Positions 15,380-59,216 are shown, counted from the first letter of the stretch. The stretch is DNA of 64,000 nucleotides from IMGVR_UViG_3300005613_000001:434001-498000, one strand, 5' to 3'. Notes: a model not told the origin generated them from the sequence alone. Numbers and translations are program-made.

Positions 15380-19456
<4,077 letters not shown>

Positions 19457-35059: not shown

Positions 35060-35590
35060 ATGTCCCAATTAGAATACTTTAATGGTAAGATCGTTACGAT
35101 ACTTACAACTCCAATCAATCGCAACTTTAAAGAAGAGGCCGCAGCACTAGGAAAACCCAAGCTATTTCCTGCCAACCTCATGGATCACTTTGTCGGGCGT
35201 TTTGAGAGTTATGATGCACTAGGGGTGATGTTGGCTCACCCTGATGCCGCTGTAGGTACAAAAGCCTACTATTTTTTGGATAAAATTGTAGGGATTGTTG
35301 AAGAACAGGAATTAAATCCTGACGATCCCCAGGAAGCTGAATTAATTGAAAAATACAAGGCATTAAAGCAAACACCGCCTCAAGATAAGGTGTATTGCCC
35401 CAAAGGACATGCACTAGATATACCACCTAATATCAAACCTGGATCACTTGTAGCTTGCCCTAAATGTCAAACTCAATTCCAATTGCCTGACGATAATCCG
35501 CCTCAAGATAAACCCGCCCCAATAAATCAATCCAACTTTGTGGATATTGATGGGATGTCCAAACTAGCAGAAGAAGCTAAATCAAAATAA
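35060..35590 (+). CDS. Putative Sm/LSm-fold protein with C-terminal zinc ribbon
   Basis: GKIVTILT...FVGRFESYDALGVML...YFLDKIVGI resembles Sm1/Sm2; CPKGH...CPKC. Confidence 0.45.
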   Translation: MSQLEYFNGKIVTILTTPINRNFKEEAAALGKPKLFPANLMDHFVGRFESYDALGVMLAHPDAAVGTKAYYFLDKIVGIVEEQELNPDDPQEAELIEKYKALKQTPPQDKVYCPKGHALDIPPNIKPGSLVACPKCQTQFQLPDDNPPQDKPAPINQSNFVDIDGMSKLAEEAKSK

Positions 35591-36685
35591 ATCATCTAAA
35601 TCATCAAAATGATCGTCGTCGGTGGGTGTAGATATAAGCGTATCAATATCACCGGGTTCAGGTGGTGGTGGTATAAACTTTGAAGGTTCAAAAATCTCTG
35701 GACCTTCTTTTTTCTTTGTAGTCTTTTTCTTCGTAGTCTTTTTCTTCTTCTTTTTAGCAGCCGCCGCCTTATCTTCCGCAGAGCGTAATTTAATTGTCAT
35801 CGGTTTCTTTTTCTTTGGCGTTGACGTTGGTTTAGATTTTGATTTGGGTTCTGGTTTGGGTTCTGGAGGTTCTGGTTTGGGTTCTGGAGGTTCTGGTTTG
35901 GGTTCTGGAGGTTCTGGTTTGGGTTCTGGAGGTTCTGGTTTGGGTTCTGGTTTGGGATATTGTATGGCTGGTCGTGGGGGTTTACGATGTTTGGTAATAT
36001 AAACAAGTATATCATCACCTTCAACCCCTGCTTCTTTAGCATCAACTATCCACTTCTCCGCTTCAGAAGGCGTCAATTTCATTTTTATCAAACTATCATA
36101 TACATCTTTCTCTGCTCCCTCAAATGATGCTCTGGAAGGCTTTGGAGGCTTCTTTTCTTTTTTCTCTTCTTGTGCTTGTGGAATTTTCCCTGCCCGAGTA
36201 ATAGCAGCATCTAAATTCCTTCTAAACAGCCTTTTCATGGTGTCTGCAAATTGATTAAGTGCAGCCCCAATGTTATCATTGCCCAATTCATTTTCTAATT
36301 GCAGATAAGCATTATGGGTATCTTTATAAACTCCCAGACTTGCATGTTCGAGTCCTAGTTTTTTCTTAATAGCTTGCCACCAGCGAGGAGACTCATATTC
36401 CGTGCCCGTCTGTGGGGATTCCCCCGTAGACCAGTTGCGCATCCGATCTCCTGTCGCTTGCATTTTGTCCCCTGCCCTCCATAACCAGTGAGCCAAACCA
36501 GAGCCCTTCCCAGGTTGATTTTGCATTATTTGGGTGTATAAAGAAGCAACCATTCTATCAATTTGTGCATCAATAGAAGGCAAAAGATCACTCATGATTT
36601 GATCTTTTGTTACACCGGCTTCCAGTTCGTCAGCCTCAATTAATTTTTGGGGATTTGCAAATATTTCATTAAGTGGGAAGTCCAT
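35582..36685 (-). CDS. Pro/Lys-rich protein with a RuvA-C-like three-helix motif
   Basis: DVYDSLIKMKLTPSEAEKWI, (PEPKPEP)n, a Lys-rich segment and an acidic tail. Confidence 0.7.
   Translation of the reverse strand: MDFPLNEIFANPQKLIEADELEAGVTKDQIMSDLLPSIDAQIDRMVASLYTQIMQNQPGKGSGLAHWLWRAGDKMQATGDRMRNWSTGESPQTGTEYESPRWWQAIKKKLGLEHASLGVYKDTHNAYLQLENELGNDNIGAALNQFADTMKRLFRRNLDAAITRAGKIPQAQEEKKEKKPPKPSRASFEGAEKDVYDSLIKMKLTPSEAEKWIVDAKEAGVEGDDILVYITKHRKPPRPAIQYPKPEPKPEPPEPKPEPPEPKPEPPEPKPEPPEPKPEPKSKSKPTSTPKKKKPMTIKLRSAEDKAAAAKKKKKKTTKKKTTKKKEGPEIFEPSKFIPPPPEPGDIDTLISTPTDDDHFDDLDDLF
35843..35956 (-). repeat. 21-bp tandem repeat encoding PEPKPEP
   Basis: GGTTCTGGTTTGGGTTCTGGA repeated about 5 times. 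Confidence 0.9.
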
Positions 36686-37194
36686 TAGATACCTTCTAAT
36701 ACATAGTCACCTATTTTTTTCAAGGACATAAGGCAGGCATCAAATCTATGAAATTCACTTGACAAATATTGTAATCTCAATTCTTGAAACCCATTCATAC
36801 CTGTATCTGTTAAATCGAAAAAGAATGATTGTCCTCTTCTTCCTACCACCTTATTTTTCTTTTTCATAAGTATATAGGCTGCGGCACCTAAATCTGATAC
36901 TTCCCCTATTTCCCCGACATTTGGCTCATGTTCTCTCATTTTCTTGAGAGACATTAAGCATGAGTCAAATTTATGAAAATCGCTTGAGAGATACTCAAAA
37001 TTTAGATTATCAAAGTCATCAAGCTCAGACTCATTCATAAGGAAATATACTGCTTGTCCTTTCTTTCCGCCGATTTCGTGCTTGTTCATTAGACAAAAAG
37101 CAGCGGCACCTAAATCGGTTACATACTTTACAACTCGTTTTTCTTCCACTTTCTTTACCTTTCTTATACTGCATTTTCTGCGGCGATCAAACAT
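36685..37194 (-). CDS. Internally duplicated small-domain protein (DUF5659-like x2)
   Basis: DLGAAAFCLM...SSDFHKFDSCLMSLKK and DLGAAAYILM...SSEFHRFDACLMSLKK. Confidence 0.7.
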   Translation of the reverse strand: MFDRRRKCSIRKVKKVEEKRVVKYVTDLGAAAFCLMNKHEIGGKKGQAVYFLMNESELDDFDNLNFEYLSSDFHKFDSCLMSLKKMREHEPNVGEIGEVSDLGAAAYILMKKKNKVVGRRGQSFFFDLTDTGMNGFQELRLQYLSSEFHRFDACLMSLKKIGDYVLEGI

Positions 37195-38171
37195 CCCCTG
37201 CTAACGCTATAAAGCGGATCAGTAGGACGGATTATCTTACCTATCTTAATTGGCAATTTCGCTTGTTTAATAACATCATTAAACAACGCATCAAACCCAT
37301 TTGGCAAACTTGATCCTCCGGCAATTACAATATCAATTGGATCGTCTGTTCTTGCTTTCTTACCTGCACCTGCCAAACCTTCTTTAATGCCTGTAGCTGT
37401 CTTTTCCATCATAATTCTATATTGAGTTTGAATGGCTCTTTCTACAAGCGTGCTTGGTTCTTTCGTTAAATCAATATTTCTCTTTTCTTTGTTGATAAAA
37501 GTAGCCGTTTCACTAACCGCCTTGGCAGCCCTTTTGTCAATCCAGTCACCACTATTAACTAATGAAAAACTAAATACTGGCGCACTGTAAATAGAGAAGC
37601 ACAGATTTACCATTCCCGCCCCAAATGAAATTCCAATGCCTGTATATGCCTTTTTCCCAAGCTCAGCATACACCAATGCTAAGCCCTCGTTAATGGGTTG
37701 AGCATTTACTGTGTGTCCGGTTTCATCTTTAAACGCCTTAAAAATAGCCTCTAAGACTTTACCGTGATAATCTGCATCGGTCTCTTCATTAATGGCATTT
37801 GCCGGGACGCTGTAATATAAGGTTTCTTTGTCCTTAGACACATTATCCAACAGGCTGTGGACCATAATTTTTAAAATCTGAAAGGCATGAATCTCACCCG
37901 GATTCACACACCCTTCTTTCATAGGTCTCTTTAGATTTAACGCACTCATCGTATAAGCCATATCTACGGCTTTCTGTCCCAATGCATAAGCAATATCATC
38001 TCGCTCAACAAGAGGAACGCCTGCATTTTTCATCATATTAAATACAAAACGGTTCTCTAATGGGAATTCAAGGAAGGCATTTACTTCCTTCTTATGAACA
38101 AAATTCTTATTTTCATCTCGCTGACAAGTCACTAAATTATACGTGCCCGCGTCAAAACCGATTCCTGACAT
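37164..38171 (-). CDS. Actin-like ATPase (MreB/MamK/ParM superfamily)
   Basis: Phosphate-1 IGFDAGT, PMKEG, YSVPA, connect-1 INEGLA, phosphate-2 ISFGAG, adenosine IAGGSS and connect-2 SVSRG. Confidence 0.9.
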   Translation of the reverse strand: MSGIGFDAGTYNLVTCQRDENKNFVHKKEVNAFLEFPLENRFVFNMMKNAGVPLVERDDIAYALGQKAVDMAYTMSALNLKRPMKEGCVNPGEIHAFQILKIMVHSLLDNVSKDKETLYYSVPANAINEETDADYHGKVLEAIFKAFKDETGHTVNAQPINEGLALVYAELGKKAYTGIGISFGAGMVNLCFSIYSAPVFSFSLVNSGDWIDKRAAKAVSETATFINKEKRNIDLTKEPSTLVERAIQTQYRIMMEKTATGIKEGLAGAGKKARTDDPIDIVIAGGSSLPNGFDALFNDVIKQAKLPIKIGKIIRPTDPLYSVSRGCLIAAENAV

Positions 38172-38183
38172 TGCTTTACCTTT

Positions 38184-38408
38184 CTATTCCTGTACCTGTT
38201 CTCCAAATTTAATCTTACCCCCCGCCTCAAAATCGGGGACCATAAAGGGCTCATCTTCTTTTTGAGCTATTTTACCCTTGCCATCAACGGAAACCTTTAT
38301 GTCATTAGTAGTTATGTTTAAATTAAGGTCTAATGTGATATTAACATCACATTCACCGTCTTTAGTCACAACGGTAACTTTGGGTTTGCCTTTTAATAAC
38401 TGTACCAT
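38184..38408 (-). CDS. Small beta-rich hypothetical protein
   Basis: 74 aa directly upstream of the actin gene. Confidence 0.6.
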   Translation of the reverse strand: MVQLLKGKPKVTVVTKDGECDVNITLDLNLNITTNDIKVSVDGKGKIAQKEDEPFMVPDFEAGGKIKFGEQVQE

Positions 38409-38456
38409 GCTTTATATCTATCCTACCAAATACCCATTTAATCTAGTTACTGAGAT

Positions 38457-38618
38457 TTAAAACTCCCAAAAAGGGATGGTTTCGACAGGGATAGGACCAT
38501 CACCACTACCACTAGAACTGGAACTAGAACTGGATGATGTGGGTGGGCGTTGTAGACAATTTTTAATCCAATTAACGAGGCGCTTGAGGGCATCCAATAA
38601 TTTCTTCAGCCATTGCAT
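38457..38618 (-). CDS. 53-aa peptide: amphipathic helix plus poly-Ser
   Basis: Below the ORF-track cutoff. Manual translation MQWLKKLLDALKRLVNWIKNCLQRPPTSSSSSSSSGSGDGPIPVETIPFWEF; GGAGG SD; ATG 1 nt after the GT9 stop. Confidence 0.65.
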   Translation of the reverse strand: MQWLKKLLDALKRLVNWIKNCLQRPPTSSSSSSSSSGSGDGPIPVETIPFWEF

Positions 38619-38619
38619 T

Positions 38620-39615
38620 TTATCCTCCAATGATTTTCAATGGTTGCTTTAACATCTTATCTACTCCTAATAGAATCATGTCTGCTGTAAGTTCTGTCAA
38701 ACAGGGTTTTGGATATGCCTTACTTTTTGGGCAATCGGGCCAATTATAACAAGGTCCACAGTTCCAGTTGCCGTCGTCTCGATGCTTTTGTACAAGTGTC
38801 CAATTTTCATACCACCTTCCATATACCTTTCCATCGACCATTGTGAAAATACCAACCTGGGGCTTTCCCAAACCCCCGGCCATATGAAAGGTCGCTGTAT
38901 CGACTGAGACTATATAATCCGCTGATGCAACAAAACTCATCCATTTTCTAATAGACCCCATAAGCAAAGGCACTTTTAGATGTTCAAGCATTGGGATTGG
39001 ACCCGTATGTGTGTAAAACACATAGCATCCACGCTCCCGTAGTCCGTTTACGACCCCCTCCATTTGATGTGAAATTAAATTTTTAGTCGCCATTGCTGAA
39101 ATTGGCGAAAATAATACTGTTGGTCCACTCTGGGTGCGATGAGACTCAATTTCTCGCTTCGCCTCTATTAATTCTTGTTCACTGAATTGGAAGTGCATAT
39201 TGTGGTTTTCTAGTGCAACCCCACAATGGTTAGCCCAAATATCACTTCTATTTTTGCCAGAGAGAGGGGCCATTCTGACTTCATACCGACAGCACGCATT
39301 GGTAGTATTATAAGATGTCAGATAGTCTCCCTGGTCTATTTTTCCAGAATCAACCAGTTCATCTACAAAGGGGTGTCCTTTGATTGCTTGGTGATATATC
39401 CCTGGGCAAGCAAAAACTATCTTAGCATCGGGCATAATCCTTTTAAAATCTTCAAAGATCATTCGGTGAACTAGAATATCCCCTAGTCCCCCATTAGCAC
39501 GATAAATGAGTATAGAATTTCGCTTGTCGCTAAATTCCCTTAAAGACAGATTGGTAGTTCTCTGGCTTTTTTTGACAAGTCTTGATAATAACTTCTTATG
39601 CTGAAGTGCTCTCAT
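38620..39615 (-). CDS. GT9 (heptosyltransferase-like) glycosyltransferase
   Basis: GGLGD, ADYIVSVDTATFHMAGGLGKPQVGIF and a Cys cluster (CGPC...C...C). Confidence 0.85.
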   Translation of the reverse strand: MRALQHKKLLSRLVKKSQRTTNLSLREFSDKRNSILIYRANGGLGDILVHRMIFEDFKRIMPDAKIVFACPGIYHQAIKGHPFVDELVDSGKIDQGDYLTSYNTTNACCRYEVRMAPLSGKNRSDIWANHCGVALENHNMHFQFSEQELIEAKREIESHRTQSGPTVLFSPISAMATKNLISHQMEGVVNGLRERGCYVFYTHTGPIPMLEHLKVPLLMGSIRKWMSFVASADYIVSVDTATFHMAGGLGKPQVGIFTMVDGKVYGRWYENWTLVQKHRDDGNWNCGPCYNWPDCPKSKAYPKPCLTELTADMILLGVDKMLKQPLKIIGG

Positions 39616-40199
39616 TCAAATAATTTCGCAGGGAATTTAGGAGGCGGCAATTGGTAGAACCGGGGTACTTGTCTTTGGCTGAACGACCCGTGCCCACGCC
39701 CTTGACCTTCGCCTTCGCCTTCTCCTTCACCCTCTCCTTCTACACCAAATGGTTGCCCCCTGCCTTTGCTGGGGTCTGTTGTACCTCTAAAGCTACCGCC
39801 TCTTTTTAAATGTTGTTGGATTGCATGTCCTTGTTCGTGTAACGCTCTGGAATAGGGCAATTCATAAACACGGGGCTCATCTTTTTTAACTTCGAATGGA
39901 CTATCTTTTTCATCAGTGGGGTTTAAATCTTTGGCCCAAACGAGGACACCACCTTCATCATTATCACTGGGTTCATTAATAATAATCCAATATACTTGGA
40001 ATTTTTCTGGCATTTGCTCTGTAGACGGCCAGCCGAACAAGCTATTAATTGCAAACCAAACACCAAAGCCCAAGAATAATGTTGCTGTAATGGTTATCAT
40101 TTTAATTACCCACAGACCTTTAGCTCCAATAACAAACCAAAGGATGAGGGCAGACAACACAATGAAAGCTATAGGAATAGCAGACGTTTCTAAACTCAT
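39612..40199 (-). CDS. Two-TM membrane protein with Gly/Glu-rich tail; third component of the motor-like cluster
   Basis: Two N-terminal TMs, a soluble domain, GEGEGEGEGEGQGRG and a Pro-rich end; ATGA overlaps on both sides. Confidence 0.75.
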   Translation of the reverse strand: MSLETSAIPIAFIVLSALILWFVIGAKGLWVIKMITITATLFLGFGVWFAINSLFGWPSTEQMPEKFQVYWIIINEPSDNDEGGVLVWAKDLNPTDEKDSPFEVKKDEPRVYELPYSRALHEQGHAIQQHLKRGGSFRGTTDPSKGRGQPFGVEGEGEGEGEGEGQGRGHGSFSQRQVPRFYQLPPPKFPAKLFE

Positions 40200-40846
40200 G
40201 GGTCTACCTCCTCTTCATAATTATTTTCATCAAAACCTCCACCATTAACTGCTTTATCTGCAATGGTCTTGGGCAATTGATTCATACTTACCACGGAGCC
40301 CTTTTTGTCTAATAAGAACCTGCAAACAGTTTTTTCATCACCATCTTCGTCTAGTGTAACCTTTTTTATAGCCACGGTTTTGAGTGTTGGATTAATTTTA
40401 TCAATCTGGACGGTAACCTCAGTAGGTTTATTGGGAGTTCGCTTCGCATACATGTGTACGTTCATTACATACTCACCAGGGATAATACCTCGAATCGTTA
40501 TAATTTCCCTATTTTCGTTATATTTAATTGTCTCACCATCAGGAGTCTTAAAAGTATCATTGCTATGCCCTAAATCGTCACGATCTAAGTGCATTAGTCC
40601 ATCTTCCCGCCTCCTAAAGAACACAAGATGGTCAGCGGGGTCTTGCAAATAAGAATCTACATCATTATTTAACTCATTATCCCAAGTGGTTGTAATAACA
40701 AACTCAGCTTTGGCTTCAGAGGCATTATCCAGTTTTGCTTCTGGATTAATTAAAATGTAAGCTATGAAGAATAACGCTACAAATCCCAATAGCGCATTGA
40801 ATAGCAAATCTAAGAAGGCTGTATTAGCCCCATAATATTGTCTCAT
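40196..40846 (-). CDS. ExbD/TolR/MotB-like single-TM protein with a YfaP/DUF2135-like domain
   Basis: TM AFLDLLFNALLGFVALFFI with the membrane Asp; W..E..NDVDSYLQDP...RE.ITIRG..PGEYVMNVHMY. Confidence 0.7.
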   Translation of the reverse strand: MRQYYGANTAFLDLLFNALLGFVALFFIAYILINPEAKLDNASEAKAEFVITTTWDNELNNDVDSYLQDPADHLVFFRRREDGLMHLDRDDLGHSNDTFKTPDGETIKYNENREIITIRGIIPGEYVMNVHMYAKRTPNKPTEVTVQIDKINPTLKTVAIKKVTLDEDGDEKTVCRFLLDKKGSVVSMNQLPKTIADKAVNGGGFDENNYEEEVDP

Positions 40847-41427
40847 TAGATGTCCTTTTTGACTAAATTTAGTCCTTGAGCTAGATTAAAATACTGGATT
40901 TTAAGGAGTTGAGAACAAATTAAACCGATAAGAGTAGTATAGAGGGCTGTAGACATACCTCCACTCATGCTGCTTAACAAATCCTGTACGGACGTGATAT
41001 CACTTACATCTAAGGTGCTAAATCCAACGAGCATTAAAATAAAACCACTTACTGTTCCAATCATACCTATATTGACACACATTTCACTTGAAAACCAACC
41101 AATTTCTTCCAACCTAGATAGCTTCTCAACTTCATCTTCCCACTTTTTTCGTCTTACTTGTTGTCTTTTTCTTTGCTTTGGAGGAAGTGAAGCTTGCGGC
41201 CCAGGTCGCGGCGGCACATCCATATTCAGCACATTACTTAATTTGAATGTTTTCAATCCACACCAAGCTGAGACATATACAAATATCCCAAAAATAACAA
41301 AACTAAGTTTGGTTAAATCTCTTTCCCAAACCTTTTGAAAAGCATCCATATAAAAGGCTGCTACCACTCCCACAAGCACTAAACCGATTACAAGCCACCA
41401 TTTTAAAAATAATTTGTGTTTAATCAT
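40846..41427 (-). CDS. MotA/TolQ/ExbB proton-channel family protein
   Basis: IGMIGTVSGF and GMSTALYTTLIGL TM hairpin plus two N-terminal TMs. Confidence 0.88.
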   Translation of the reverse strand: MIKHKLFLKWWLVIGLVLVGVVAAFYMDAFQKVWERDLTKLSFVIFGIFVYVSAWCGLKTFKLSNVLNMDVPPRPGPQASLPPKQRKRQQVRRKKWEDEVEKLSRLEEIGWFSSEMCVNIGMIGTVSGFILMLVGFSTLDVSDITSVQDLLSSMSGGMSTALYTTLIGLICSQLLKIQYFNLAQGLNLVKKDI

Positions 41428-41460
41428 TATATTTTCCTCTCACAAGTAAGAGAGTAATCG

Positions 41461-41498
41461 AAAAAAAATCTCCTCGGGCCAAAGGACCGAGGAGATTT
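41461..41498 (-). terminator. Rho-independent terminator
   Basis: On minus: AAATCTCCTCGG-loop-CCGAGGAGAT followed by a T-run. Confidence 0.88.
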
Positions 41499-41521
41499 AT
41501 ATTTAATCCGGGGTTTAATTC

Positions 41522-42133
41522 TTAGCTGTTGCAGCTTGAACGAATGGACAGAAGAACGGCAACATCGGCGTCAGCGGCACCAGATTCACTGTTTGCAACC
41601 TGAATCTTGGAGACAGCCAAATCACCATTGTTGAAGATCTGCGTATCGGCAGCAGCCAACGTAAAGGTTGCTGTGGTTAGACCATTCAAGCGAACCTGAA
41701 CAGAACCAGAACCATTGTTGGTAATCTGCGTGAACACAGCGGCGGAACCGTATGTGGTCACAACATCTACCTCGTTGTCCGCAAAAGTAGTACCCGCAGT
41801 GGCGGAAATCGTGGTTGCAGCGGGATATGTATTCTCGCCAGCAACGTCAGAATAAACACTACCATCATCACTTACCACTTCAACAATTGCATCTTCAAGA
41901 GAGCACTGTGGGTAAGCAAATCTCTTCCAATAATTACAATCCGTAAATGTCTCCCCGTCAGACAACTTACGATTAATTAAATTTGGACCCATAACATAAA
42001 CTTGACGTTGCTTAGAAGGATCAATCTGATCTCCAAGCCCTTGACCCGTAACGGCACCGGCTGATGCGGTGGAGGGGTCTTTGTCCAAAAGGCCCTGTTC
42101 AACGTTGTTCAACGCAACTCTAAATACGCTCAT
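41522..42133 (-). CDS. Probable abundant virion protein (e.g. head decoration)
   Basis: A/T/S/N-rich, with frequent C-ending codons (TTC, AAC), GAGGAG SD and its own terminator. Confidence 0.6.
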   Translation of the reverse strand: MSVFRVALNNVEQGLLDKDPSTASAGAVTGQGLGDQIDPSKQRQVYVMGPNLINRKLSDGETFTDCNYWKRFAYPQCSLEDAIVEVVSDDGSVYSDVAGENTYPAATTISATAGTTFADNEVDVVTTYGSAAVFTQITNNGSGSVQVRLNGLTTATFTLAAADTQIFNNGDLAVSKIQVANSESGAADADVAVLLSIRSSCNS

Positions 42134-42201
42134 ACCTAACTCCTCAAATATGAATATACAGTATGACTCTCAATCTTCAAAAGTATATATGCAGCTATTA
42201 A

Positions 42202-42810
42202 CTATTTTAGATCCAAGATGTCCCCATTAAACATCTTTTCATAAAGAGAAGTGCCTAAACCAGTGGGTACTAAACTAGTCTTAATACCTTTTGAGGCGGC
42301 AAGATAAAGCGGTCCACACTCAACGCCTATTACCCAACCCGCATTTAGAACATCAGTAGTGATTTCTGGCTCAAACCCCTGTTTTGCAGCCATTTCGATG
42401 ACCGCCTCTTTTTGGAAATAGGACATAGATTTGACAGGATGTAAACCTTCAGGGCATATTGCGCACTTGGCTGTGGGATCATGATGGGGAACATCTACCC
42501 GTTCGCAAGCAATATTGGAATCATCTAATAAACCGATAATAGGATGTGTTCGCATATTAAATTTCAAGGGTTTAATTAAGGCAAAATCATTCTTTTTTTG
42601 GGTCATTTTAGAGTGACCAAACACCCTTGGATTATTAAACCAGCTTACAAGTTCATCTTTACAGCAAATAAAAATTTCAACACCATTTAATTCTCGTTCA
42701 AGAGTCGGTAGTAAACAATTTAATTGTACCACATATTCGGAAGACTCCCCTAAATACGATATACAAATCCTATCTTTTATTTTTGCATATATAGGTAAAG
42801 GCATTCCCAT
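42202..42810 (-). CDS. Degenerate GT9-like protein
   Basis: C-terminal WVIGVECGPLYLAASKGIKT resembles the GT9 motif (i.g.DSGp.HlAaa.g). Confidence 0.45.
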   Translation of the reverse strand: MGMPLPIYAKIKDRICISYLGESSEYVVQLNCLLPTLERELNGVEIFICCKDELVSWFNNPRVFGHSKMTQKKNDFALIKPLKFNMRTHPIIGLLDDSNIACERVDVPHHDPTAKCAICPEGLHPVKSMSYFQKEAVIEMAAKQGFEPEITTDVLNAGWVIGVECGPLYLAASKGIKTSLVPTGLGTSLYEKMFNGDILDLK

Positions 42811-44467: not shown

Positions 44468-47400
44468 CTAAACTCTAGGGCAAGGAACAATTGCAACACA
44501 TTGCAATTCTTCTTCGCTAGCCCCAGTGAGCTTCTGTATGTCTAAATCAATCTTGACATTGACATCTATTGGCTTGCCCTTGTAAACCATTTCTACTTCC
44601 ATATCTTCTGGAGCTTTGAGGTAAATTTCCTCGGGTATATTATGAATTAGAGTAATAGTCTCAGGGATTCCTGTTACTTTAATGCTGTTTGGAATGCCAG
44701 AAGCATCTAGCTGAATCGATTTGGGAAAATCTTCAGGCACTAAAAGATCAATAGATTCAGGTATCGCAGGAGCAATTAATTCAATAGATTTAGGAACATC
44801 TGTAGCTGTTAACTCAATGGAAGTTGGAATTTCAAAATCAGAAACAATTTTAATTTGTTCTGGGATTTTGGGGCCATCAAATGTAATTTTTTCTGGAATA
44901 TTCCCTTCTAACTTAATAGATTCTGGCAAATCATGCTTTAATTTAATAGCCCTTGGCATCTTGGGGGCAACAACTTGAATAGTAGAAGGAATGCCAAGAT
45001 CACCAACTTCAACAGTCAAAGGGTCATCTTCTTTGAACATATCTTCATCAAAGAATCGTGATGATTGCCTGTTCTTTTTATTCTGCGAAAATGCCTGTGA
45101 GGTTGCACTAACAGAGCTAGGACACGAAACCGTCACAACACAACTAATAGTGGGTGGATCACTCCATGTAACCGTTAGGTCGGGTGCCTCCATTGTAATC
45201 TGAGTTGGTATTTCACAATCACATACAATTGCAATTTCTGATGGAATATCACAATCACATGTAACATTAATTTCGGAAGGTATATCACAATCACATACAA
45301 TTGTAATTTCTGACGGTAGATCGCCAGAGACATCAGCCCCTAAAACAACTTCAATTTGTGAGGGAAGGGATTGGCTCAAATCATCAGCCGCTCTAATTTC
45401 AATTGTCGAAGGTATTGAACCAGCGCTCTCTCCGGCTTCAATAAGAATAACCGATGTGAAATTCTCCGGCATTGCCCCAAATCCAACCTCAGATGGAATT
45501 GGTGTTTCCATTGGAGCAAATCCAACTTGGGATGGAATTGGTGTGTCCATCGAGCCGAAATCAACTCGGGATGGAATTGGTGTTTCCATTGGAGTAAATC
45601 CAACTTGTGATGGAATTGGTGTGTCCATCGAGCCGAAATTAACTTGGGATGGAATTGATTCCATTGAACCAAATTCCACTACTGAAGGCACAGCATTCCC
45701 CGTAAATTCCACTACCGAAGGTACAGCATTCCCCGTAAATTCCACTACCGATGGCACCTCATTCCCTGTAAGTGTAATCTCAGATGGAACTGTCCCTGTA
45801 AGTGTAATCTCAGAAGGCAGAGAACTCTCCCCGAATTCAACTACCGATGGCAAAGGACTGTCCGCAAAATCAATTATTGATGGTACATCATTCCCTGTAA
45901 GTGTAATCTCAGAAGGAACACTCAAACCCGTAAGTGTAATCTCAGATGGTATATCATCATTCACCTGAATCATTGATGGCACACTATCTGTAACTGTAAT
46001 CTCAGACGGCACTTCCAAACCCGTAAGCGTAATCTCAGATGGTATGTCATCCATCACCTGAAGCACTGATGGAATATCATGATTTACTTCAATTATTGAT
46101 GGAATATGATCCGTAGGTCCAAAATTAATTACCGATGGAATATCATGTTCTACTGTAATTATTGATGGAATATGATCTGTGGGTCCAAATTGAATTAATG
46201 ATGGAATATCATGTTCTACTGTAATTATTGACGGAATATGATCCGTAGGACCAAATTGAATTATTGATGGCAAGTCATGTACTACTTCAATTACCGATGG
46301 GAAAGGAAGAGGTACAGGTCCAAAATTAATTACCGATGGAATATCATGATCTACTACAATTACCGATGGAATATGATCTGTGGGTCCAAATTCAATTATT
46401 GATGGTAAATCATGCACTACTGAAATAATTGATGGAATATCATTGGGAAAATATCCAAATTCAATTAACGACGGAATATTAACAGGACTAAATGTAATAT
46501 TCGATGGAATATCAACGGGACCAAATGTAATCACAGATGGAATATCAACAGGGCTAAATGTAATCACAGACGGAATTTCAACTTCTCCGAATAAAATAAT
46601 AGACGGGAAATTAACCGCGTCTCCAACAACTGAAATTACCGAGGGTATATTGACGGGTCCAAATAAAATAATTGATGGAATGTCAAGAGGCCCAAAATTG
46701 ATTATTGATGGGATTTCAAGAGGCCCAAATTCAATTAATGTTGGGATGAAAATGTCACCAAATGGACTAAAACTTAGAAGAAAACTTGGGATATCAAAAT
46801 CTAAACTTATACAAGGAAATAAAATAGGCGGCACAATAACTTCAGGCGGCAAGAAGTCGCAGTCAGGAATATCACAATTGGGATAATCAGGAACTTCAGG
46901 AACCGGAATTTCCAATATTGGATTTACATACCCCGGAGCAGGCAAATTAGATTGGTGTCGTATAGTAGGTGTTTGCACAACTTGGCAACGAGGGTCTGTT
47001 ACAATTACCACTGGGTCAATAGTAGAATTAGGCGCATATCTGTGAGTGCCCTGTGTCTCAGTAGTGGTAAATGTTCCATCACCAAAATCTAATTTATATT
47101 GAGTGTATAGCCCTTCAATGTCTATATTGTATTCTAAATCAACACCAACACACTCATTGCTTGTCTCAGCAACCTTTGTTTCAAAGCTGCCCACTGTCAC
47201 ACAGAAATCATCTAAACACAAAGGGGTTTCATCAAGACACCGAATACGGAAATCTAAAGTTTCTGTATCAACGTCATAGTTGTAACCTATAAACTCTTCA
47301 AGATCTATTACAGCATCAGCTAACTGGTTGTGGTGTTCGGCAACTACCATACCGCGAACTATTGTGCCTGTTCGGGGGCAAATAGCAGTGCCAGCTATAG

Positions 47401-47707
47401 TTGAATTATATTGTGTTTCTTCACCACCTAGATTTCTTAAAGCCTTTTTGAGAACATTAATTTTACCATTAGCATCATATCCAACATCTGCATAATAAAA
47501 TAATTCTCCTCCTATAGTTGCAAAACCGTTGGTAGGCCAGATTTCCGTTTCATTTATCCCAACTGGCACAATATAGACTTCTTCCGACCACGGCTGATTA
47601 TCAGTCGCCAACACACTCTCTACAGTGTTATTGACTAGATAAAGCGTGTGATTGCTGTTAATCCCCAGGGGATATACAGGAGTTGGGGGGAAGTTTTGTT
47701 GTGCCAT
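44468..47707 (-). CDS. Long repeat-rich virion fibre protein with shared anchor and PKD-like domain
   Basis: N-terminal VAEHHNQLADAV anchor, DFGDG (PKD-like), then dozens of IPS-x-I repeats. Confidence 0.8.
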   Translation of the reverse strand: MAQQNFPPTPVYPLGINSNHTLYLVNNTVESVLATDNQPWSEEVYIVPVGINETEIWPTNGFATIGGELFYYADVGYDANGKINVLKKALRNLGGEETQYNSTIAGTAICPRTGTIVRGMVVAEHHNQLADAVIDLEEFIGYNYDVDTETLDFRIRCLDETPLCLDDFCVTVGSFETKVAETSNECVGVDLEYNIDIEGLYTQYKLDFGDGTFTTTETQGTHRYAPNSTIDPVVIVTDPRCQVVQTPTIRHQSNLPAPGYVNPILEIPVPEVPDYPNCDIPDCDFLPPEVIVPPILFPCISLDFDIPSFLLSFSPFGDIFIPTLIEFGPLEIPSIINFGPLDIPSIILFGPVNIPSVISVVGDAVNFPSIILFGEVEIPSVITFSPVDIPSVITFGPVDIPSNITFSPVNIPSLIEFGYFPNDIPSIISVVHDLPSIIEFGPTDHIPSVIVVDHDIPSVINFGPVPLPFPSVIEVVHDLPSIIQFGPTDHIPSIITVEHDIPSLIQFGPTDHIPSIITVEHDIPSVINFGPTDHIPSIIEVNHDIPSVLQVMDDIPSEITLTGLEVPSEITVTDSVPSMIQVNDDIPSEITLTGLSVPSEITLTGNDVPSIIDFADSPLPSVVEFGESSLPSEITLTGTVPSEITLTGNEVPSVVEFTGNAVPSVVEFTGNAVPSVVEFGSMESIPSQVNFGSMDTPIPSQVGFTPMETPIPSRVDFGSMDTPIPSQVGFAPMETPIPSEVGFGAMPENFTSVILIEAGESAGSIPSTIEIRAADDLSQSLPSQIEVVLGADVSGDLPSEITIVCDCDIPSEINVTCDCDIPSEIAIVCDCEIPTQITMEAPDLTVTWSDPPTISCVVTVSCPSSVSATSQAFSQNKKNRQSSRFFDEDMFKEDDPLTVEVGDLGIPSTIQVVAPKMPRAIKLKHDLPESIKLEGNIPEKITFDGPKIPEQIKIVSDFEIPTSIELTATDVPKSIELIAPAIPESIDLLVPEDFPKSIQLDASGIPNSIKVTGIPETITLIHNIPEEIYLKAPEDMEVEMVYKGKPIDVNVKIDLDIQKLTGASEEELQCVAIVPCPRV
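44620..46800 (-). repeat. IPSxI-based peptide repeat array with drifting unit
   Basis: Successive blocks DIPSVITFGPV, HDIPSIIEFGPTD, IPSEITLTG, PSVVEFTGNAV, TPIPSQVGF, CDCDIPSEI and IPESI. Confidence 0.85.
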
Positions 47708-48456: not shown

Positions 48457-50868
48457 CTAATATATTGCCATCATCCATTGATCGCCAGAAGGTCTTGCTC
48501 CTAGAGATGAAAATGTAAGGTCCGCCTCATTAAATTTAATAAAGGCATTAGGACTATAATCAAAGCTCATATAAGCCCTTCTGTCATCATCCGACACAGC
48601 AAGAAGTGGCTGGTCTAAATTACTAAATCCTGCCACGGTTTTATCTTGAAGTGATCCAAAAGCAACAGAATTTGTTCCTGCACCACCTGTTTCCCATACG
48701 CCGCTTGTATCGTTGTAAGCGGAAATATTAGCTGAGTTATTTAAAAAGTACATGCCACTTGTTAAACCAACCAATTGACCTTCTAGTTTTGTAGTGCCAG
48801 CTATATCCACTAGTTTTTTAAGATCCCTAAGGGGATTTGATAAAATGCCTTCCGTTCGGTAGAAGCTTTTGATTCTAAAAAATGCTCCAACACCATCATT
48901 TCTTGCAAAATATCCAACATTATTTTTTGTTGCAGCCCGATAAACACTGAAATGTCCTTCTTCTGGCACACCTGTTGTGGGGTCATAGTTTGCTATATTT
49001 TGCTGAAGTTCGTCCGCCCCATTTAAATAATTAGCAAATTGAAAGTCAACTGAAGTGCTAGACAAGTCTGTTACATCTACGGCGAGTTTTGCTGCATTTG
49101 TAGGAGATGTATCAGGCGGTATTACAGCATCGGTTGTATTTCCTAGAATGAAGTAAGCATTAGAATAGATGTTCATACCTACCCAATTCCACGGTCTTGA
49201 AACTGTAGGAACACCGGGAGTGATATAAACGTCATCAAACCCATTAAACTCTCTAATTTTAATTTTCTCTGTGGCAGGAGACGCTGCGGAATCTCGTCCA
49301 CCAGCCCAAAACAGCAACGATGTGCCATGAGCAACAGCCCCAGATGTAGTTGTAGATCGTTGAGAGAAGAATGTATTTCTTTTAAATTCTCTTAACAACT
49401 GTTCTGCATTATCATGGTCTTTAAGAAAATCTGTGTTTCTGCTGATAGTCAAAGGCGTTGATCGCGTTTTAAAGGTTTCGCTAATCAACCCAAATTCGCG
49501 TACTGAAGCTTGTCCGTTTGAATATATCCACAACCATACATTTTCTCGCTCTACTACATCAAATGCATCTTCATAAGTTGTAATTCTATAAGCACCATAT
49601 TCTGTATCGACTCTTAAAATTAAATCATATAATCCACCAACACTATAAGAAGCCCTGGTAGAGCGGGCGTTTCCATGCGTTAAGTCATCACTAAGCTCCC
49701 AGTTGTAATCTACAATTGGATCAATAGCGCTACCTTGAGCATCCAATAACTCCCCGGCATATGAAACACTTGGAGTATTGGGATTTTCCCCTTCCGCTAT
49801 CACTAAATCTATAAAAGTATCTACAGGTGTTTTGATAAAGGGTGTTGTTACAAAAGGCCCGCCCAATGGACTACCCTGTGTAACATCTTGTCCGCTTCTC
49901 TGGTCAATTTCAATAATAGCTTCATCTGGGGCGGGGATTCTCGCTTGGATATAATCGTAAAATGTAACTGTGTCCGTCCCATATCTATTTCTCACCGTGA
50001 AACTAACATCATATTTGCCCGGAGAAGTATATGTTTTAGTAATATTGCCACCATCAATGTCTAGCACCTTTACTCCTACCTGCTCCACAGGAACTACACT
50101 AGCTACTGAAATGGTTGAAGGGCAACCTGATATATCAAGATAATTACAATGTTCCACTAAAGCACAAGATATAGATGATATTGTTGAGATTGTTGAAATA
50201 CAAGAAATATTAGAAATACACGATATCATTGAACAATCATAATCACCAAAATCCCATTCAAAAACCGTGGGAGATACAAGGCAGTATTTTTCATTTGTGC
50301 CATACCAATTGCCCCCCATATTAAAACTTTTCTCTGTAAATGTAACCTTGAAAGGAACTAAACCAACTTGCTTATCCACCGAAAACCAAGCTCTCGGTTG
50401 TAAGACCAATCGGTGTAGGAAGTTGATGCGCCCCTCCATTGTGTCGCCATAAGGAGCTAAATCAATAGTTCCCTTGATTCCAACAAAGGTTTCAATAGCA
50501 ATAATGGCATCTTTTAAAGCATTGTGATATTCCGCCATTACGTTTTGAGTGACATTAGTGACCCTTTTCGGCTTGGCAACATCTGTATGTGTTGATAGTA
50601 AAGACAAACCACTGAAAGTAAATGAATTATCACTCTCCTGTGATTTTGCACTATAATTGAAAGATATAGCACGATCATCTACATCACTACATTGCTCCGT
50701 AAGAGTGATATATCCTGTAGAGGGGAAATTGTTATAAATATCAACATCGCCCTCAACACTAATACTTGTGTCCCCAGGAGTATAATCATCTGTTAATCGC
50801 AACCTTAAAGCATCATGGGCAATTAATAAATTTTGTTCTGTATCAAGTGACTCTGGATAATTACTCAT
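48457..50868 (-). CDS. PKD-domain virion protein (fibre family paralog 2)
   Basis: VMAEYHNALKDAI anchor; F.WDFGD...YTSPGKYDVSFTV PKD motifs with a Cys/Ser/Ile-rich insertion. Confidence 0.8.
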   Translation of the reverse strand: MSNYPESLDTEQNLLIAHDALRLRLTDDYTPGDTSISVEGDVDIYNNFPSTGYITLTEQCSDVDDRAISFNYSAKSQESDNSFTFSGLSLLSTHTDVAKPKRVTNVTQNVMAEYHNALKDAIIAIETFVGIKGTIDLAPYGDTMEGRINFLHRLVLQPRAWFSVDKQVGLVPFKVTFTEKSFNMGGNWYGTNEKYCLVSPTVFEWDFGDYDCSMISCISNISCISTISTISSISCALVEHCNYLDISGCPSTISVASVVPVEQVGVKVLDIDGGNITKTYTSPGKYDVSFTVRNRYGTDTVTFYDYIQARIPAPDEAIIEIDQRSGQDVTQGSPLGGPFVTTPFIKTPVDTFIDLVIAEGENPNTPSVSYAGELLDAQGSAIDPIVDYNWELSDDLTHGNARSTRASYSVGGLYDLILRVDTEYGAYRITTYEDAFDVVERENVWLWIYSNGQASVREFGLISETFKTRSTPLTISRNTDFLKDHDNAEQLLREFKRNTFFSQRSTTTSGAVAHGTSLLFWAGGRDSAASPATEKIKIREFNGFDDVYITPGVPTVSRPWNWVGMNIYSNAYFILGNTTDAVIPPDTSPTNAAKLAVDVTDLSSTSVDFQFANYLNGADELQQNIANYDPTTGVPEEGHFSVYRAATKNNVGYFARNDGVGAFFRIKSFYRTEGILSNPLRDLKKLVDIAGTTKLEGQLVGLTSGMYFLNNSANISAYNDTSGVWETGGAGTNSVAFGSLQDKTVAGFSNLDQPLLAVSDDDRRAYMSFDYSPNAFIKFNEADLTFSSLGARPSGDQWMMAIY

Positions 50869-55512: not shown

Positions 55513-55980
55513 TTAAACAAAATTCAATCGCCAATTCCAGGTAATTTGCATTTGGTTGGTTTTGGTAAGATCGGGGAAAGTAACCATACTGTATAGTTGG
55601 CCGTTTTGCATTCGGAGAGCCATTTCATTTAATATGGCTGAATTAGCTTCTGTAAAACTAATCACGGAGGTAAAAATCACTTGTGTTTCATCTCTGCTTG
55701 CAATTACAGATTTGGAGAGTTCCGTAACGCCAAACAAACCTGTACGGCTAGCTGCCACAAATTTTTGAACACCACCACTTGCACCATTTGTCCCAAAAAT
55801 CATTTGGGAAATATAGAAGTCATAAGTATCATCTACTTCATTTGCTAGTGATTTCGCCAAGGCAATACGACCGTTGCGAAGAATGGTATTTTTGAAGGTT
55901 TTAACTTCCTTTCGCCCATCACGATAATCAATAATTCGTTCTATTGTGCCCTCGGGCTGTATCTGTTCATTAACGTTCAT
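55513..55980 (-). CDS. Tail/baseplate-associated structural protein (tail-collar-like)
   Basis: FKNTILRNGRIALA...MIFGTNG...EAN...NEMAL...TF..LTK...ITWNW; start 55980 by ATGA coupling. Confidence 0.65.
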   Translation of the reverse strand: MNVNEQIQPEGTIERIIDYRDGRKEVKTFKNTILRNGRIALAKSLANEVDDTYDFYISQMIFGTNGASGGVQKFVAASRTGLFGVTELSKSVIASRDETQVIFTSVISFTEANSAILNEMALRMQNGQLYSMVTFPDLTKTNQMQITWNWRLNFV

Positions 55981-58900: not shown

Positions 58901-59216
58901 TATAATAAAAAGTAGAGGCAACCACACTTTGTTCTGCATCTTGTCTTAACTTGGTTGCATTTTCAATATTATCAGCAGTTGGAGTCGTGCAAGCCAATTC
59001 TTCAGCAGCAATCGCAGCAGTTAGCTTGTCTTGATTGTAATTTTTAGATTCATGCTCTCTAAGGTTGCCACTAATAAAATCCCTTTCAATGAAGTAGATT
59101 GTCACATTGTCAACTTTATATGGATCAACCAAACACCCATCGGTATCTGTTGTTTCTAAATCAATAAGCACTGTGTCCGCCATTGTAGGCGATTCATCAA
59201 GTGTTTTTATTGCCAT
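55977..59216 (-). CDS. Large baseplate wedge protein with a P2 gpI-like tail domain
   Basis: LIDLMDANVTNESFLNLLANMFN...WRRQIKRSIPLFKRKGT..ALE pattern; follows the gp6-like gene. Confidence 0.8.
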   Translation of the reverse strand: MAIKTLDESPTMADTVLIDLETTDTDGCLVDPYKVDNVTIYFIERDFISGNLREHESKNYNQDKLTAAIAAEELACTTPTADNIENATKLRQDAEQSVVASTFYYNEATPSDNFGTELFPAWLSTDTDNAILERTSTGTFQLTWEPDGRREGQYFVCWTWTVNVAGDTSTNYRQFDLFGATQITTAVPTHFTDPLKYDTLLDRYTPQMFKSYLGDHDLTPEVIDNFNGAIAKGFTFVEDLANQLIDLMDANVTNESFLNLLANMFNLQLRSGDPTLWRRQIKRSIPLFKRKGTYLALEEALAQADIVLTKLTRLWQVVSPYTWVEGLLVSSNGQTEFTLDKNPILPIDTNNFELSIRPAGSDDFVDLTSDYVTFVTVDGVTTMTWVGHQLSMSPIVLAEDDLLKITYEVNNVPNATQQSIEDYIRTLPLDDQRDFRDQTYPLKNWNVRVIEEDDPLFDVIIPDRQPYTPAVVFGQIRTEFPFSENIYNMEEYNGSLRDSTDPCDIDKDFLDCCTKCLGSKFTVDIEIESLSDDRIIEALSIIDEFKPFHAVLHTMNFSGGVEEFVNCGVEEVEALVTVAVDENVYCGTAQTIFSRSMEHNMWEMPPEMVKRTETADLRAVVTGVKGTVSNDHIVLYAPNVDFQELNFNNSTYINDPAAYVAGTNDNVLEILAPAIGRAGTYTVSGEPTKNTIWIDPASPDTISESPFRTGEFTFRLSNIVYTNAVNTISRDDVNNFSDASVNFGLLGVKTQWDVDNDADYSGGAWEIKIGASTYTILTTLPDGTLLIDDGGVAGTGITYTLLDDGSVPITTSTTGALTVTARGKVVITDAATSDIRILINIGDYVVWGGSEYEVIGFEEGASKTLYMDYNGVAGAGAISVYRRLVDNEVGYVAYSGATLTTSTNYETNLNIQNGASAPGYPWEDGGFLEQGTGTDAPSTEWTPPFSDGHFKEDFLLYVDADYFVINDINGTEITLGGPAQVWGTAGVANTDFTIYKAMKEDLTVRPQRDPAGPGHAFDFVDRRGKDIIVNTVETAAPMAFKAAMLNAANKDEIVETIQQSEDISFNIEWASGLEEKGEI

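What the first reader, a model, noticed from the sequence alone, without database searches (positions are those of the whole stretch)
35582..41427. Best candidate for a new system: phage-encoded MotA/ExbB-type ion motor coupled to a glycosyltransferase and upstream of an actin
Seen: four genes chained by TAATG/ATGA overlaps. They encode a MotA/TolQ/ExbB channel (GTV and YTT threonines kept, the ExbB/TolQ TM3 Glu replaced by Thr); a single-TM partner with the membrane Asp but a YfaP/DUF2135-like domain instead of an ExbD or OmpA domain; a two-TM protein with a GE-repeat tail; and GT9. The same-strand run continues through small genes to the actin-like ATPase. Known: 5:2 ion motors (MotAB, ExbBD, TolQR, AglRQS, ZorAB) convert ion flux to work, and AglRQS works with MreB. 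No TonB box partner, TolB/Pal or ZorC/D/E is present. Inference: a non-canonical phage motor that could drive transport along the actin filament, export or remodel a glycan, block superinfection, or dissipate membrane potential to control lysis.
Basis: partly seen in the sequence, partly recalled or inferred. Interest (0 to 1): 0.82.

Follow-up and report, generated by a model that had tools for sequence, protein, structure and literature searches.

The report
Orphan ion-motor gene triad in megaphage
A marine 527-kb phage carries a three-gene membrane "ion motor" cassette of an unstudied family that is common in phages and bacteria, but it landed next to the sugar-transferase and actin genes by rearrangement and is not part of one machine with them.

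Summary
The sequence observations hold. Four minus-strand genes are chained by TAATG/ATGA/ATGA overlaps. They are a MotA/TolQ/ExbB-type channel (A), a single-helix partner with an invariant membrane Asp and a DUF2135/TerD-like beta-sandwich (B), a two-helix protein with a GE-rich tail (C), and a GT9-like transferase. An actin-like ATPase lies downstream.

A-B-C is a self-contained, translationally coupled triad of an uncharacterised 5:2-motor-like family:
- it occurs in at least 157 IMG/VR contigs, in cultured Rhizobium phages, and in 41 of 301 sampled genomes of the class of Thalassobaculum litoreum;
- gene order was A-B-C in 124 of 124 non-redundant loci.

GT9 and the actin belong to a separate conserved block (up203-GT9-s74-actin-p169). 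In 80 related loci GT9 or s74 follows up203 directly. The triad lies within 10 kb in only 8 of them and never sits between up203 and GT9. A complete 532-kb relative that has the actin block has no B homologue.

So the motor-GT9-actin coupling is peculiar to this genome. The triad looks like an inserted accessory cassette placed after a strong terminator. Its small cytoplasmic face and large periplasmic parts argue for work on the cell envelope, not along actin. What that work is remains unknown.

The parts
41462..41497 (-). Intrinsic-terminator hairpin followed by a run of eight U, between up203 and gene A. It marks the end of the upstream (tail/baseplate-side) transcription unit.
   Evidence: Read. 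Fold -21.8 kcal/mol, z -4.25, 0 of 200 shuffles as stable. The consensus scan did not list it; I think the 9-nt loop exceeds its 8-nt limit.
40846..41427 (-). A: MotA/TolQ/ExbB-superfamily channel subunit, 193 aa. Four hydrophobic segments, N-in. The short cytoplasmic loop carries a basic/proline insert of about 25 residues seen only here and in one 84%-identical relative.
   Evidence: Pfam PF01618 1.6e-8. TolQ alignment. G121, G124, G128, T165 and G168 in 151/151 homologues and T125 in 143/151. Insert visible in alignment A3.
40196..40846 (-). B: axle-type subunit, 216 aa. N-terminal helix with Asp13, then a periplasmic beta-sandwich (residues about 47-190) with an invariant acidic motif (D62, D64, D90, D91).
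   Evidence: Alignments. Invariance. AlphaFold2 pLDDT 78.5. DUF2135 fold matches. TerD Z 7.5/7.0. No Pfam or PDB sequence match.
39612..40199 (-). C: third subunit, 195 aa. Two-helix membrane hairpin, small beta-rich periplasmic domain with one helix, disordered G/E-rich linker, and a conserved C-terminal 'FYxLPPxKLPxK' strand.
   Evidence: Homologous to the gene after B in phage and bacterial loci. K33, G56, E76, P77, P109, Y116, L184 and K192 invariant in A4. AlphaFold2 pLDDT 79.4. 1,832 cluster representatives at E<=0.001.
38620..39615 (-). GT9-like glycosyltransferase, 331 aa. By synteny it belongs to the actin block, not to the triad.
   Evidence: PF01075 4.5e-7 over a partial stretch. 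Heptosyltransferase I model 6e-8. In relatives it follows up203 directly (58/80 loci).
38457..38618 (-). Small serine-rich ORF (53 aa from the ATG after a GGAGGA site). Function unknown.
   Evidence: Read. Conservation was not assessed: my tblastn query for it was in the wrong frame.
38184..38408 (-). s74: small conserved protein of the actin block.
   Evidence: tblastn hit in 69/80 actin loci, always just upstream of the actin.
37164..38171 (-). Actin-like ATPase of the Volactin family, 335 aa.
   Evidence: PF25216 1.7e-66, 225 bits. 145 related viral stretches at 63-76% identity.
36685..37194 (-). p169: protein with an internal duplication, encoded directly after the actin. Candidate actin partner or adaptor (inference only).
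   Evidence: Present in 75/80 actin loci. Internal repeat seen (family D3).
35582..36685 (-). p367: lysine-rich protein with PEPKPEP repeats. Not conserved in relatives.
   Evidence: tandem 21-nt coding repeat. No tblastn hits in relatives.
41522..42133 (-). up203: conserved first gene of the actin block in relatives. Here it is separated from GT9 by the terminator and the triad.
   Evidence: 76/80 actin loci. No family match.

Best explanation
Genes A-B-C (39612-41427, minus strand) form an autonomous three-gene ion-motive-force motor cassette. It belongs to a distinct, uncharacterised family within the MotA/ExbB/TolQ superfamily.

Shown:
- The three genes always travel together, in this order, with overlapping or abutting reading frames.
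- The residues that carry the ion in known 5:2 motors are invariant or nearly so: Asp in the B helix, and Thr in the last two A helices.
- The family is widespread in phages and in bacterial chromosomes and has no conserved fourth gene.
- In this genome the cassette sits immediately after a strong terminator, between two genes (up203 and GT9) that are adjacent in every relative examined.

Inferred:
- A forms a pentamer that turns around a B dimer as H+ or Na+ passes the Asp/Thr site.
- A exposes only a short cytoplasmic loop, while B (a Ca-binding-type TerD/DUF2135-like beta-sandwich) and C (a small beta-rich domain on a flexible acidic linker) are periplasmic. The work is therefore delivered to the cell envelope.
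- C probably sits at the rim of the motor as TonB and TolA do.
- Its conserved C-terminal strand may be the handle that B grips, by analogy with the way ExbD grips a TonB strand.
- For the phage this is an accessory, moron-like module that adds an envelope-directed energy transducer to the infected cell.

GT9 and the actin block are a separate conserved module, and their contiguity with the triad here is a local rearrangement. The actual substrate or target of the motor is not known.
For: Identity of A: Pfam and the TolQ alignment.

Conserved residues: B Asp13 in 152/153; A T165 in 151/151 and T125 in 143/151.

Triad universality:
- A and C were found in 88 of 91 loci by tblastn alone.
- Order was A-B-C in 124/124 non-redundant loci, with a median A-B gap of -4 nt and B-C gap of 2 nt.
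- Clustering all neighbouring genes found no other universal gene.

Breadth:
- more than 1,400 B clusters at 90% identity;
- 157 IMG/VR stretches;
- 27 cultured Rhizobium/Sinorhizobium phage records;
- 240 stretches in GTDB genomes, with housekeeping neighbours;
- 41 of 301 genomes of one class.

Topology and folds.

Independence from actin/GT9.

Terminator.

Position at a module boundary: baseplate and tail genes lie upstream on the same strand.

A natural C-C tandem fusion (P0391) suggests that C acts in pairs.

Precedents from the literature:
- Motors in which an Asp-bearing helix carries a non-ExbD domain (PMC12204202).
- ExbD grips a TonB strand by beta-sheet addition (10.1101/2023.08.11.552980).
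Against: No complex was modelled or observed, so the 5:2 stoichiometry and the position of C are analogies.

Sequence similarity of A to solved motors is weak (E about 0.2 to TolQ, MotA and PomA alike).

The TerD match for B is at a Z-score that unrelated folds often reach. Calcium binding is untested.

The AlphaFold model of C puts its C-terminal strand on its own domain, not on B.

Some carriers are MAGs labelled Parcubacteria or Saccharibacteria, which are thought to lack an outer membrane. If those contigs are cellular, an outer-membrane target cannot be general.

In 8 of 80 actin loci the triad lies within 1-5 kb of the actin block in three different arrangements. That leaves room for a loose association in this lineage.

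The ATGA overlap of C with GT9 could couple their translation in this one genome.
Confidence: 0.65

Rival explanations
1. One reading: motor, glycosyltransferase and actin are one system. The motor would drive transport along the actin filament or export and remodel a glycan made by GT9.
For: All lie on one strand, with an ATGA overlap between C and GT9. A's cytoplasmic loop has a basic/proline insert seen only here and in one close relative, which could be a lineage-specific docking site. Sugar-related genes follow C in some other phages: an epimerase in 26 loci, and a GT2 two genes after C in L010. The triad lies within 10 kb of the actin block in 8/80 relatives.
Against: The window's gene order is unique among 80 actin loci. 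GT9 normally follows up203 directly, and the actin block exists without the triad in a complete 532-kb genome and four other large records. The triad occurs without actin or GT9 in about 90% of phage loci and in bacterial chromosomes. The epimerase neighbour comes with the same set of co-occurring genes (terminase, ERCC4, HNH), which points to one phage lineage. The cytoplasmic face of the motor is minimal.
Confidence: 0.06
2. Competition or defence role. The cassette changes the envelope so that other phages or colicins cannot enter, or it interferes with host envelope motors (Tol, Ton) or motor-based defence (Zorya).
For: In the phage loci looked at, it sits among replication and accessory genes or at a module boundary. 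That is typical of accessory cassettes. The weak PADLOC matches are to ZorA models, on the membrane core only. Envelope-directed topology.
Against: The same triad is a single-copy chromosomal operon among housekeeping genes in many bacteria. That fits a physiological envelope function better than a conflict function. No defence-island neighbours were seen. No ZorA tail and no ZorC/D/E.
Confidence: 0.14
3. Regulated ion leak. The complex does no mechanical work and instead serves the phage as a gated H+/Na+ channel that tunes membrane potential, for example to time lysis.
For: The conserved Asp/Thr ion path. Known stator units leak ions when unplugged (established knowledge of MotAB). Two conserved periplasmic parts could act as the gate.
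Against: It is not next to recognisable lysis genes in the loci examined. A simple leak would not need two conserved, folded periplasmic domains and a conserved C-terminal motif kept across phages and bacteria. Chromosomal copies in free-living bacteria argue against a lysis function.
Confidence: 0.08
4. Nutrient-uptake helper. A Ton-like energiser would power host outer-membrane transporters during infection, as an auxiliary metabolic gene set.
For: The three-part layout mirrors ExbB-ExbD-TonB. C has a long flexible linker and a conserved terminal motif. Marine phages often carry uptake genes (general knowledge).
Against: There is no TonB C-terminal domain and no ExbD domain. No TonB-dependent receptor is linked in any locus. 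C has two helices. I did not look for the SHLS-type motif.
Confidence: 0.05

Closest known systems
ExbB-ExbD-TonB and TolQ-TolR-TolA (proton-driven 5:2 envelope motors with a third, rim-bound force transducer)
   Same: Three co-transcribed inner-membrane proteins. The channel subunit has the two Thr-bearing helices. The partner helix has the essential Asp. The third subunit is anchored in the membrane with a flexible periplasmic linker. Output goes to the envelope, not the cytoplasm.
   Different: A has four hydrophobic segments and almost no cytoplasmic domain. The TolQ/ExbB Glu is not conserved (Thr, Val or Ile). B carries a beta-sandwich instead of the ExbD/TolR alpha/beta domain. C has two helices, a small beta-rich domain and a C-terminal LPPxKLPxK motif instead of a TonB/TolA C-terminal domain. 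No receptor, TolB or Pal partner.
TolQ-like motors with Asp-bearing 'transpore helix'-vWA partners (Mol Biol Evol 2025, PMC12204202)
   Same: The same logic: a TolQ-like pentamer whose axle helix, with the conserved Asp inside a Thr ring, is fused to a non-ExbD periplasmic domain. Function unknown. Found in Proteobacteria and Verrucomicrobia.
   Different: The periplasmic domain here is a TerD/DUF2135-like beta-sandwich, not vWA. There is a single B gene rather than heterologous pairs, and a universal third gene C. The family is very common in phages.
MotAB/PomAB flagellar stators
   Same: Four-helix N-in topology of A. Asp in the B helix. Thr pair.
   Different: No OmpA-like peptidoglycan-binding domain. 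The cytoplasmic loop is far too short for a torque-generating interface. Not in flagellar loci, apart from a chance FliG neighbour in one bacterial family.
Zorya ZorAB
   Same: Weak profile matches of A to ZorA membrane cores.
   Different: A is 193 aa and has no long ZorA tail. B has no ZorB-type domain. No ZorC/D/E. The cassette is carried by phages.
DUF2135 (YfaP-type) and TerD calcium-binding beta-sandwiches
   Same: Fold of B residues about 47-190, and the 'DxD ... D-D-x-G' acidic pattern.
   Different: No significant sequence match to either family. Here the domain is tethered to an Asp-bearing motor helix.

Membership tests
MotA/TolQ/ExbB superfamily (PF01618) | Profile match above the curated threshold | tested here: met
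   34.8 bits against 22.9. Relatives also match.
MotA/TolQ/ExbB superfamily (PF01618) | Conserved Thr in each of the last two membrane helices | tested here: met
   T125 and T165 align to TolQ T145 and T178 (residue numbers from memory; alignment). Present in 143/151 and 151/151 homologues.
5:2 ion-driven motors in general | Adjacent single-helix partner with an invariant membrane Asp | tested here: met
   Asp13 in 152/153. A-B gap has a median of -4 nt.
5:2 ion-driven motors in general | Pentamer of A around a dimer of B | not testable with these tools
   No multimer prediction was available.
Ton system (ExbBD-TonB) | ExbD periplasmic domain (PF02472) and TonB C-terminal domain (PF03544) | tested here: not met
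   No hits in B or C or anywhere in the genome.
Tol-Pal | TolA, TolB and Pal partners; TolR-type domain | tested here: not met
   The ten proteins scanned across 35582-42133 gave no TolA, TolB, Pal or TolR-type match. No OmpA/Pal-type domain in the genome.
Flagellar stator MotAB/PomAB | OmpA-like peptidoglycan-binding domain in B; large cytoplasmic torque interface in A | tested here: not met
   The cytoplasmic loop is 54 residues here and shorter in relatives.
Zorya | ZorA with long C-terminal tail; ZorB; ZorC/D or ZorE | tested here: not met
   PADLOC matches cover only A residues about 107-180, at E>=1.5e-5. There were no hits for the neighbours.
DUF2135 (PF09906) | Sequence profile match | tested here: not met
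   None for the window protein. 1 of 31 relatives matched, at E 0.12.
DUF2135 (PF09906) | Same fold | tested here: met
   Foldseek against AFDB clusters: several DUF2135 proteins, best E 2e-8, probability 1.00, TM 0.53.
TerD | Calcium-binding beta-sandwich fold | tested here: inconclusive
   The two top PDB matches are TerD proteins (Z 7.5 and 7.0, 120-140 residues). That Z range is common for unrelated folds.
Glycosyltransferase family 9 | Profile match | tested here: met
   29.9 bits against 22, but only profile positions 173-231 of 247. Heptosyltransferase models also match partially.
Actin-like ATPase, Volactin family (PF25216) | Full-length profile match | tested here: met
   225 bits, positions 3-321 of 321.

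The most novel reading that the evidence does not exclude
The A-B-C triad is a new class of envelope force transducer. In it a rotating, calcium-binding beta-sandwich axle (B) repeatedly grips and pulls the C-terminal strand of a tethered partner (C). Phages spread it to re-engineer the envelope of infected cells. In this megaphage it has been wired into the actin operon, with a lineage-specific basic insert in the motor's cytoplasmic loop. That would physically link a membrane motor to a phage cytoskeleton.
Probability: 0.07. Interest if true: 0.85.

Novelty: new variant of a known kind. Interest (0 to 1): 0.55.

Why it matters
Ion-driven 5:2 motors power flagella, nutrient import, outer-membrane maintenance, gliding and Zorya defence, and each newly characterised family has revealed a new use of the same engine. 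This triad is a large unstudied family, with about 1,800 clusters at 50% identity for subunit C alone. It has an unusual axle domain and an obligatory third subunit. It is carried by many marine and soil phages and by roughly one in seven sampled genomes of one bacterial class.

Tractable carriers exist: cultured Rhizobium phages and Thalassobaculum litoreum DSM 18839. Its function can therefore be tested directly. For phage biology it would be a first case of a phage-borne motor of this kind. For this window, the result removes a tempting but unsupported motor-glycan-actin story.

Tried and rejected
1. Close-relative scan of viral contigs with the single B protein found nothing. The alignment-based scan worked.

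2. tblastn of A against cultured phages found nothing. The Rhizobium phage A genes were found only through their position and Pfam.

3. FliG next to the triad in Thalassobaculum looked like a rotor partner. It is limited to three loci of one family, so I treat it as a chance neighbour.

4. The ESM Atlas shape search twice listed a 297-aa viral cluster with a lysozyme domain as similar to C. Neither the word-indexed search nor the listed best matches of the exhaustive HMMER search (150 of 1,832) showed a C-lysozyme fusion. I dropped it as a lead.

5. A weak DUF4131 (ComEC N-terminal) hit for one bacterial C and weak OB-like PDB hits are not enough to call C an OB fold or a DNA binder.

6. A search for centromere-like repeats near the actin found only coding repeats.

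I re-aligned without them.

8. Literature searches for a phage-borne MotA/ExbB module, DUF2135, or TerD combined with motor terms found no description of this triad.

9. Only one marine DNA run holds part of the region, so I did not attempt read mapping for expression.

Full report
**Setting.** The window is bases 434001-498000 of a 527,112-bp IMG/VR virus record rated 100% complete. The only public run that holds part of the region is a marine metagenome. On the minus strand, baseplate and tail genes lie transcriptionally upstream: a gp5-like OB domain at 61230-63380, a P2 gpI-like protein at 55977-59216, and a PKD protein at 48457-50868. A primase gene lies beyond the finding on the other strand. 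The finding therefore sits at a boundary between genome modules.

**The observation.** The minus-strand genes are A (40846-41427), B (40196-40846), C (39612-40199) and a GT9-like gene (38620-39615). Their junctions read TAATG, ATGA and ATGA.
- A matches Pfam MotA_ExbB above threshold.
- A profile of 31 A homologues aligns to TolQ so that both channel threonines are kept. The Glu of the TolQ/ExbB last helix is Thr in the window protein.
- B has one N-terminal helix with Asp13 in an ExbD/TolR-like 'FLDLLF' context (that resemblance is from my own knowledge of those proteins).
- B has no Pfam, NCBIfam or PDB sequence match for the rest of the protein.
- C has a two-helix hairpin and a G/E-rich segment.
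- The actin-like gene (37164-38171) is a full-length match to the Volactin family.

A has four hydrophobic segments, with charge distribution indicating both ends in the cytoplasm, as in MotA/PomA rather than ExbB. A strong intrinsic terminator lies between up203 and A.

**The triad is a conserved unit.**
- B has more than 1,400 relatives at 90% clustering, mostly 50-63% identical, from marine and other metagenomes.
- In contigs that encode them, a MotA_ExbB gene precedes B and a C homologue follows it. One such contig carries a terminase.
- Twenty-seven cultured Rhizobium and Sinorhizobium phage records carry B. In the two I inspected, a MotA_ExbB gene precedes it and a small membrane protein follows. 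All are annotated hypothetical.
- An alignment-based scan found 157 IMG/VR stretches. In 91 loci, tblastn alone found A in 88 and C in 88.
- A scan of one genome per GTDB species found 240 stretches. The best 80 came from Alphaproteobacteria, Gammaproteobacteria including Thiobacillus, Verrucomicrobiae, several candidate-phyla MAGs and others.
- There too A precedes B and C follows.
- Over 124 non-redundant loci the order is always A-B-C on one strand. The median gaps are -4 nt and 2 nt.
- Clustering all neighbouring genes found no fourth universal gene.
- Bacterial neighbours are ordinary housekeeping genes: dihydropyrimidine dehydrogenase, SfsA, methionine aminopeptidase, PQQ dehydrogenases, tRNA synthetases, alanine racemase and GatB.
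- In a sample of 301 species of the class of Thalassobaculum litoreum, 41 have B, nearly always in one copy.
- Four carrier genomes also hold 4-8 other MotA_ExbB genes. One 0.6-Mb assembly has only this one.

**Origin of the window's copy.** In a tree of 153 B sequences, 44 bacterial sequences form one clade, many of them on megabase contigs. The window's B nests deep in a clade that is mostly viral (midpoint root, FastTree support values). Among the genome hits, only short MAG contigs (2-7 kb) reach 51-53% identity. The best hits on contigs longer than 100 kb are about 46% identical. The cassette is therefore not a recent capture of a host operon.

**Anatomy and likely mechanism.**
- Ion path: across 151-153 unique sequences, the ion-path residues and the glycines around them are invariant or nearly so. 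These are B Asp13 and A T125 and T165.
- Subunit A: its cytoplasmic loop is short. The window protein and one 84%-identical relative carry an extra basic, proline-rich insert there.
- Subunit B:
  - The model (pLDDT 78.5) is a helix followed by a beta-sandwich.
  - The most conserved motif (REDGLMHLDRDDLG) lies in a low-confidence loop.
  - The sandwich matches DUF2135 proteins in AFDB clusters, including a 234-aa protein with the same helix-plus-domain layout.
  - In the PDB its two best matches are calcium-binding TerD proteins. Calcium-dependent carbohydrate-binding and protease C-terminal sandwiches come next. The Z-scores are modest.
  - W55, D62, D64, D90, D91, G93, G124 and N129 are invariant.
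- Subunit C:
  - The model (pLDDT 79.4) is a helical hairpin, a small beta-rich domain with one helix, and a disordered acidic linker.
  - It ends in a terminal strand from the conserved 'FYxLPPxKLPxK' motif. K192 is invariant in the 28-sequence alignment.
  - The basic loop between the two helices places the folded part in the periplasm.
  - No solved fold matches it convincingly.
  - The family has 1,832 representatives at E<=0.001 in an exhaustive search. One of the 150 best is a natural C-C tandem fusion.

From this I infer an ion-driven A-around-B motor whose output is periplasmic, with C as a rim-bound or gripped partner. Two published findings make this plausible. First, TolQ-like motors exist whose Asp-bearing helix carries a vWA domain instead of an ExbD domain (PMC12204202). 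Second, ExbD captures a TonB strand by beta-sheet addition (10.1101/2023.08.11.552980). None of this was tested here.

**The link to GT9 and actin.**
- The actin is itself widespread, with 145 related viral stretches at 63-76% identity.
- In 80 loci with up to 10 kb on each side, the conserved block is [up202]-up203-[GT9]-s74-actin-p169. Counts are up203 76, GT9 58, s74 69 and p169 75.
- GT9, or s74 where GT9 is missing, follows up203 directly in all of them.
- The triad is within 10 kb in 8 loci, in three arrangements: convergent after p169 at about 1.3 kb, convergent at about 5 kb, and co-directional after a 2-kb gap. It is never between up203 and GT9.
- Two further contigs hold both more than 10 kb apart (locus tables).
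- Five large actin-bearing records have no B homologue, including a 532,729-bp genome rated 100% complete.
- Of 91 triad loci, only 7 carry the actin.

In the window the triad lies exactly between up203 and GT9, directly after the terminator. The simplest reading is insertion or transposition of an accessory cassette at a module boundary. The ATGA overlap with GT9 may couple translation in this one genome, but it is not a conserved feature.

**What it is not.** No ExbD, TonB C-terminal or OmpA-type domain exists anywhere in the genome. PADLOC matches are limited to the membrane core of ZorA models, and no other Zorya component is nearby. The triad is therefore not a Ton, Tol, flagellar or Zorya system, although it belongs to the same superfamily of engines.

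**Function.** The data do not identify the target. The envelope-directed architecture suggests a physiological envelope function that phages borrow. So do the chromosomal single-copy distribution among housekeeping genes and the presence in small genomes. Superinfection exclusion, a gated ion leak and a Ton-like uptake helper remain possible for the phage copies, and I rank them below that.

**Literature.** Searches found no paper describing this triad.

**Verdict.** The motor-glycosyltransferase-actin system is not. The triad is a new variant of a known kind of machine. It is interesting as a large orphan family with tractable carriers, not as a peculiarity of this phage.

Noticed in passing
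window 36685-38408 and 41522-42810; loci L172-L250: A conserved phage 'actin block' ([up202]-up203-[GT9]-s74-Volactin-like actin-p169) occurs in at least 145 viral stretches, including records of 250-530 kb. p169, encoded right after the actin, has an internal duplication and could be its adaptor. No centromere-like repeats were found nearby.
   Followed up: partly
L161 7310-8332 (also L162, L166): In Thalassobaculum litoreum DSM 18839 and two related genomes, a full-length FliG homologue is encoded directly after the A-B-C triad, outside any visible flagellar cluster. The pairing is restricted to this family.
   Followed up: partly
protein P0391 (374 aa): A natural tandem fusion of two C modules in one polypeptide, which hints that C works as a pair.
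   Followed up: partly
window 15380-19453 (minus strand): A 1,357-aa protein with ten collagen triple-helix repeat stretches, in a stretch of about 50-54% G+C against a background of about 39%.
   Followed up: no
window 44468-47707 (minus strand): A 1,079-aa protein made largely of short 'IPS'-containing repeats with no family match, downstream of baseplate genes. Possibly a fibre or surface protein.
   Followed up: no
window 40846-41427, A residues about 69-95: A basic, proline-rich insert (PPRPGPQASLPPKQRKRQQVRRKKW) in the cytoplasmic loop of A. Among 31 aligned homologues it is shared only with one 84%-identical metagenomic protein (P0122).
   Followed up: partly
L006/L039 8669-9448: In one phage lineage a radical-SAM/SPASM gene and a 77-aa ORF are inserted between B and C.
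   Followed up: no
G010 (genome of L099): A 0.6-Mb bacterial assembly whose only MotA_ExbB-family gene is the triad's A. The triad is flanked by tRNA synthetases, alanine racemase and beta-oxidation genes.
   Followed up: no
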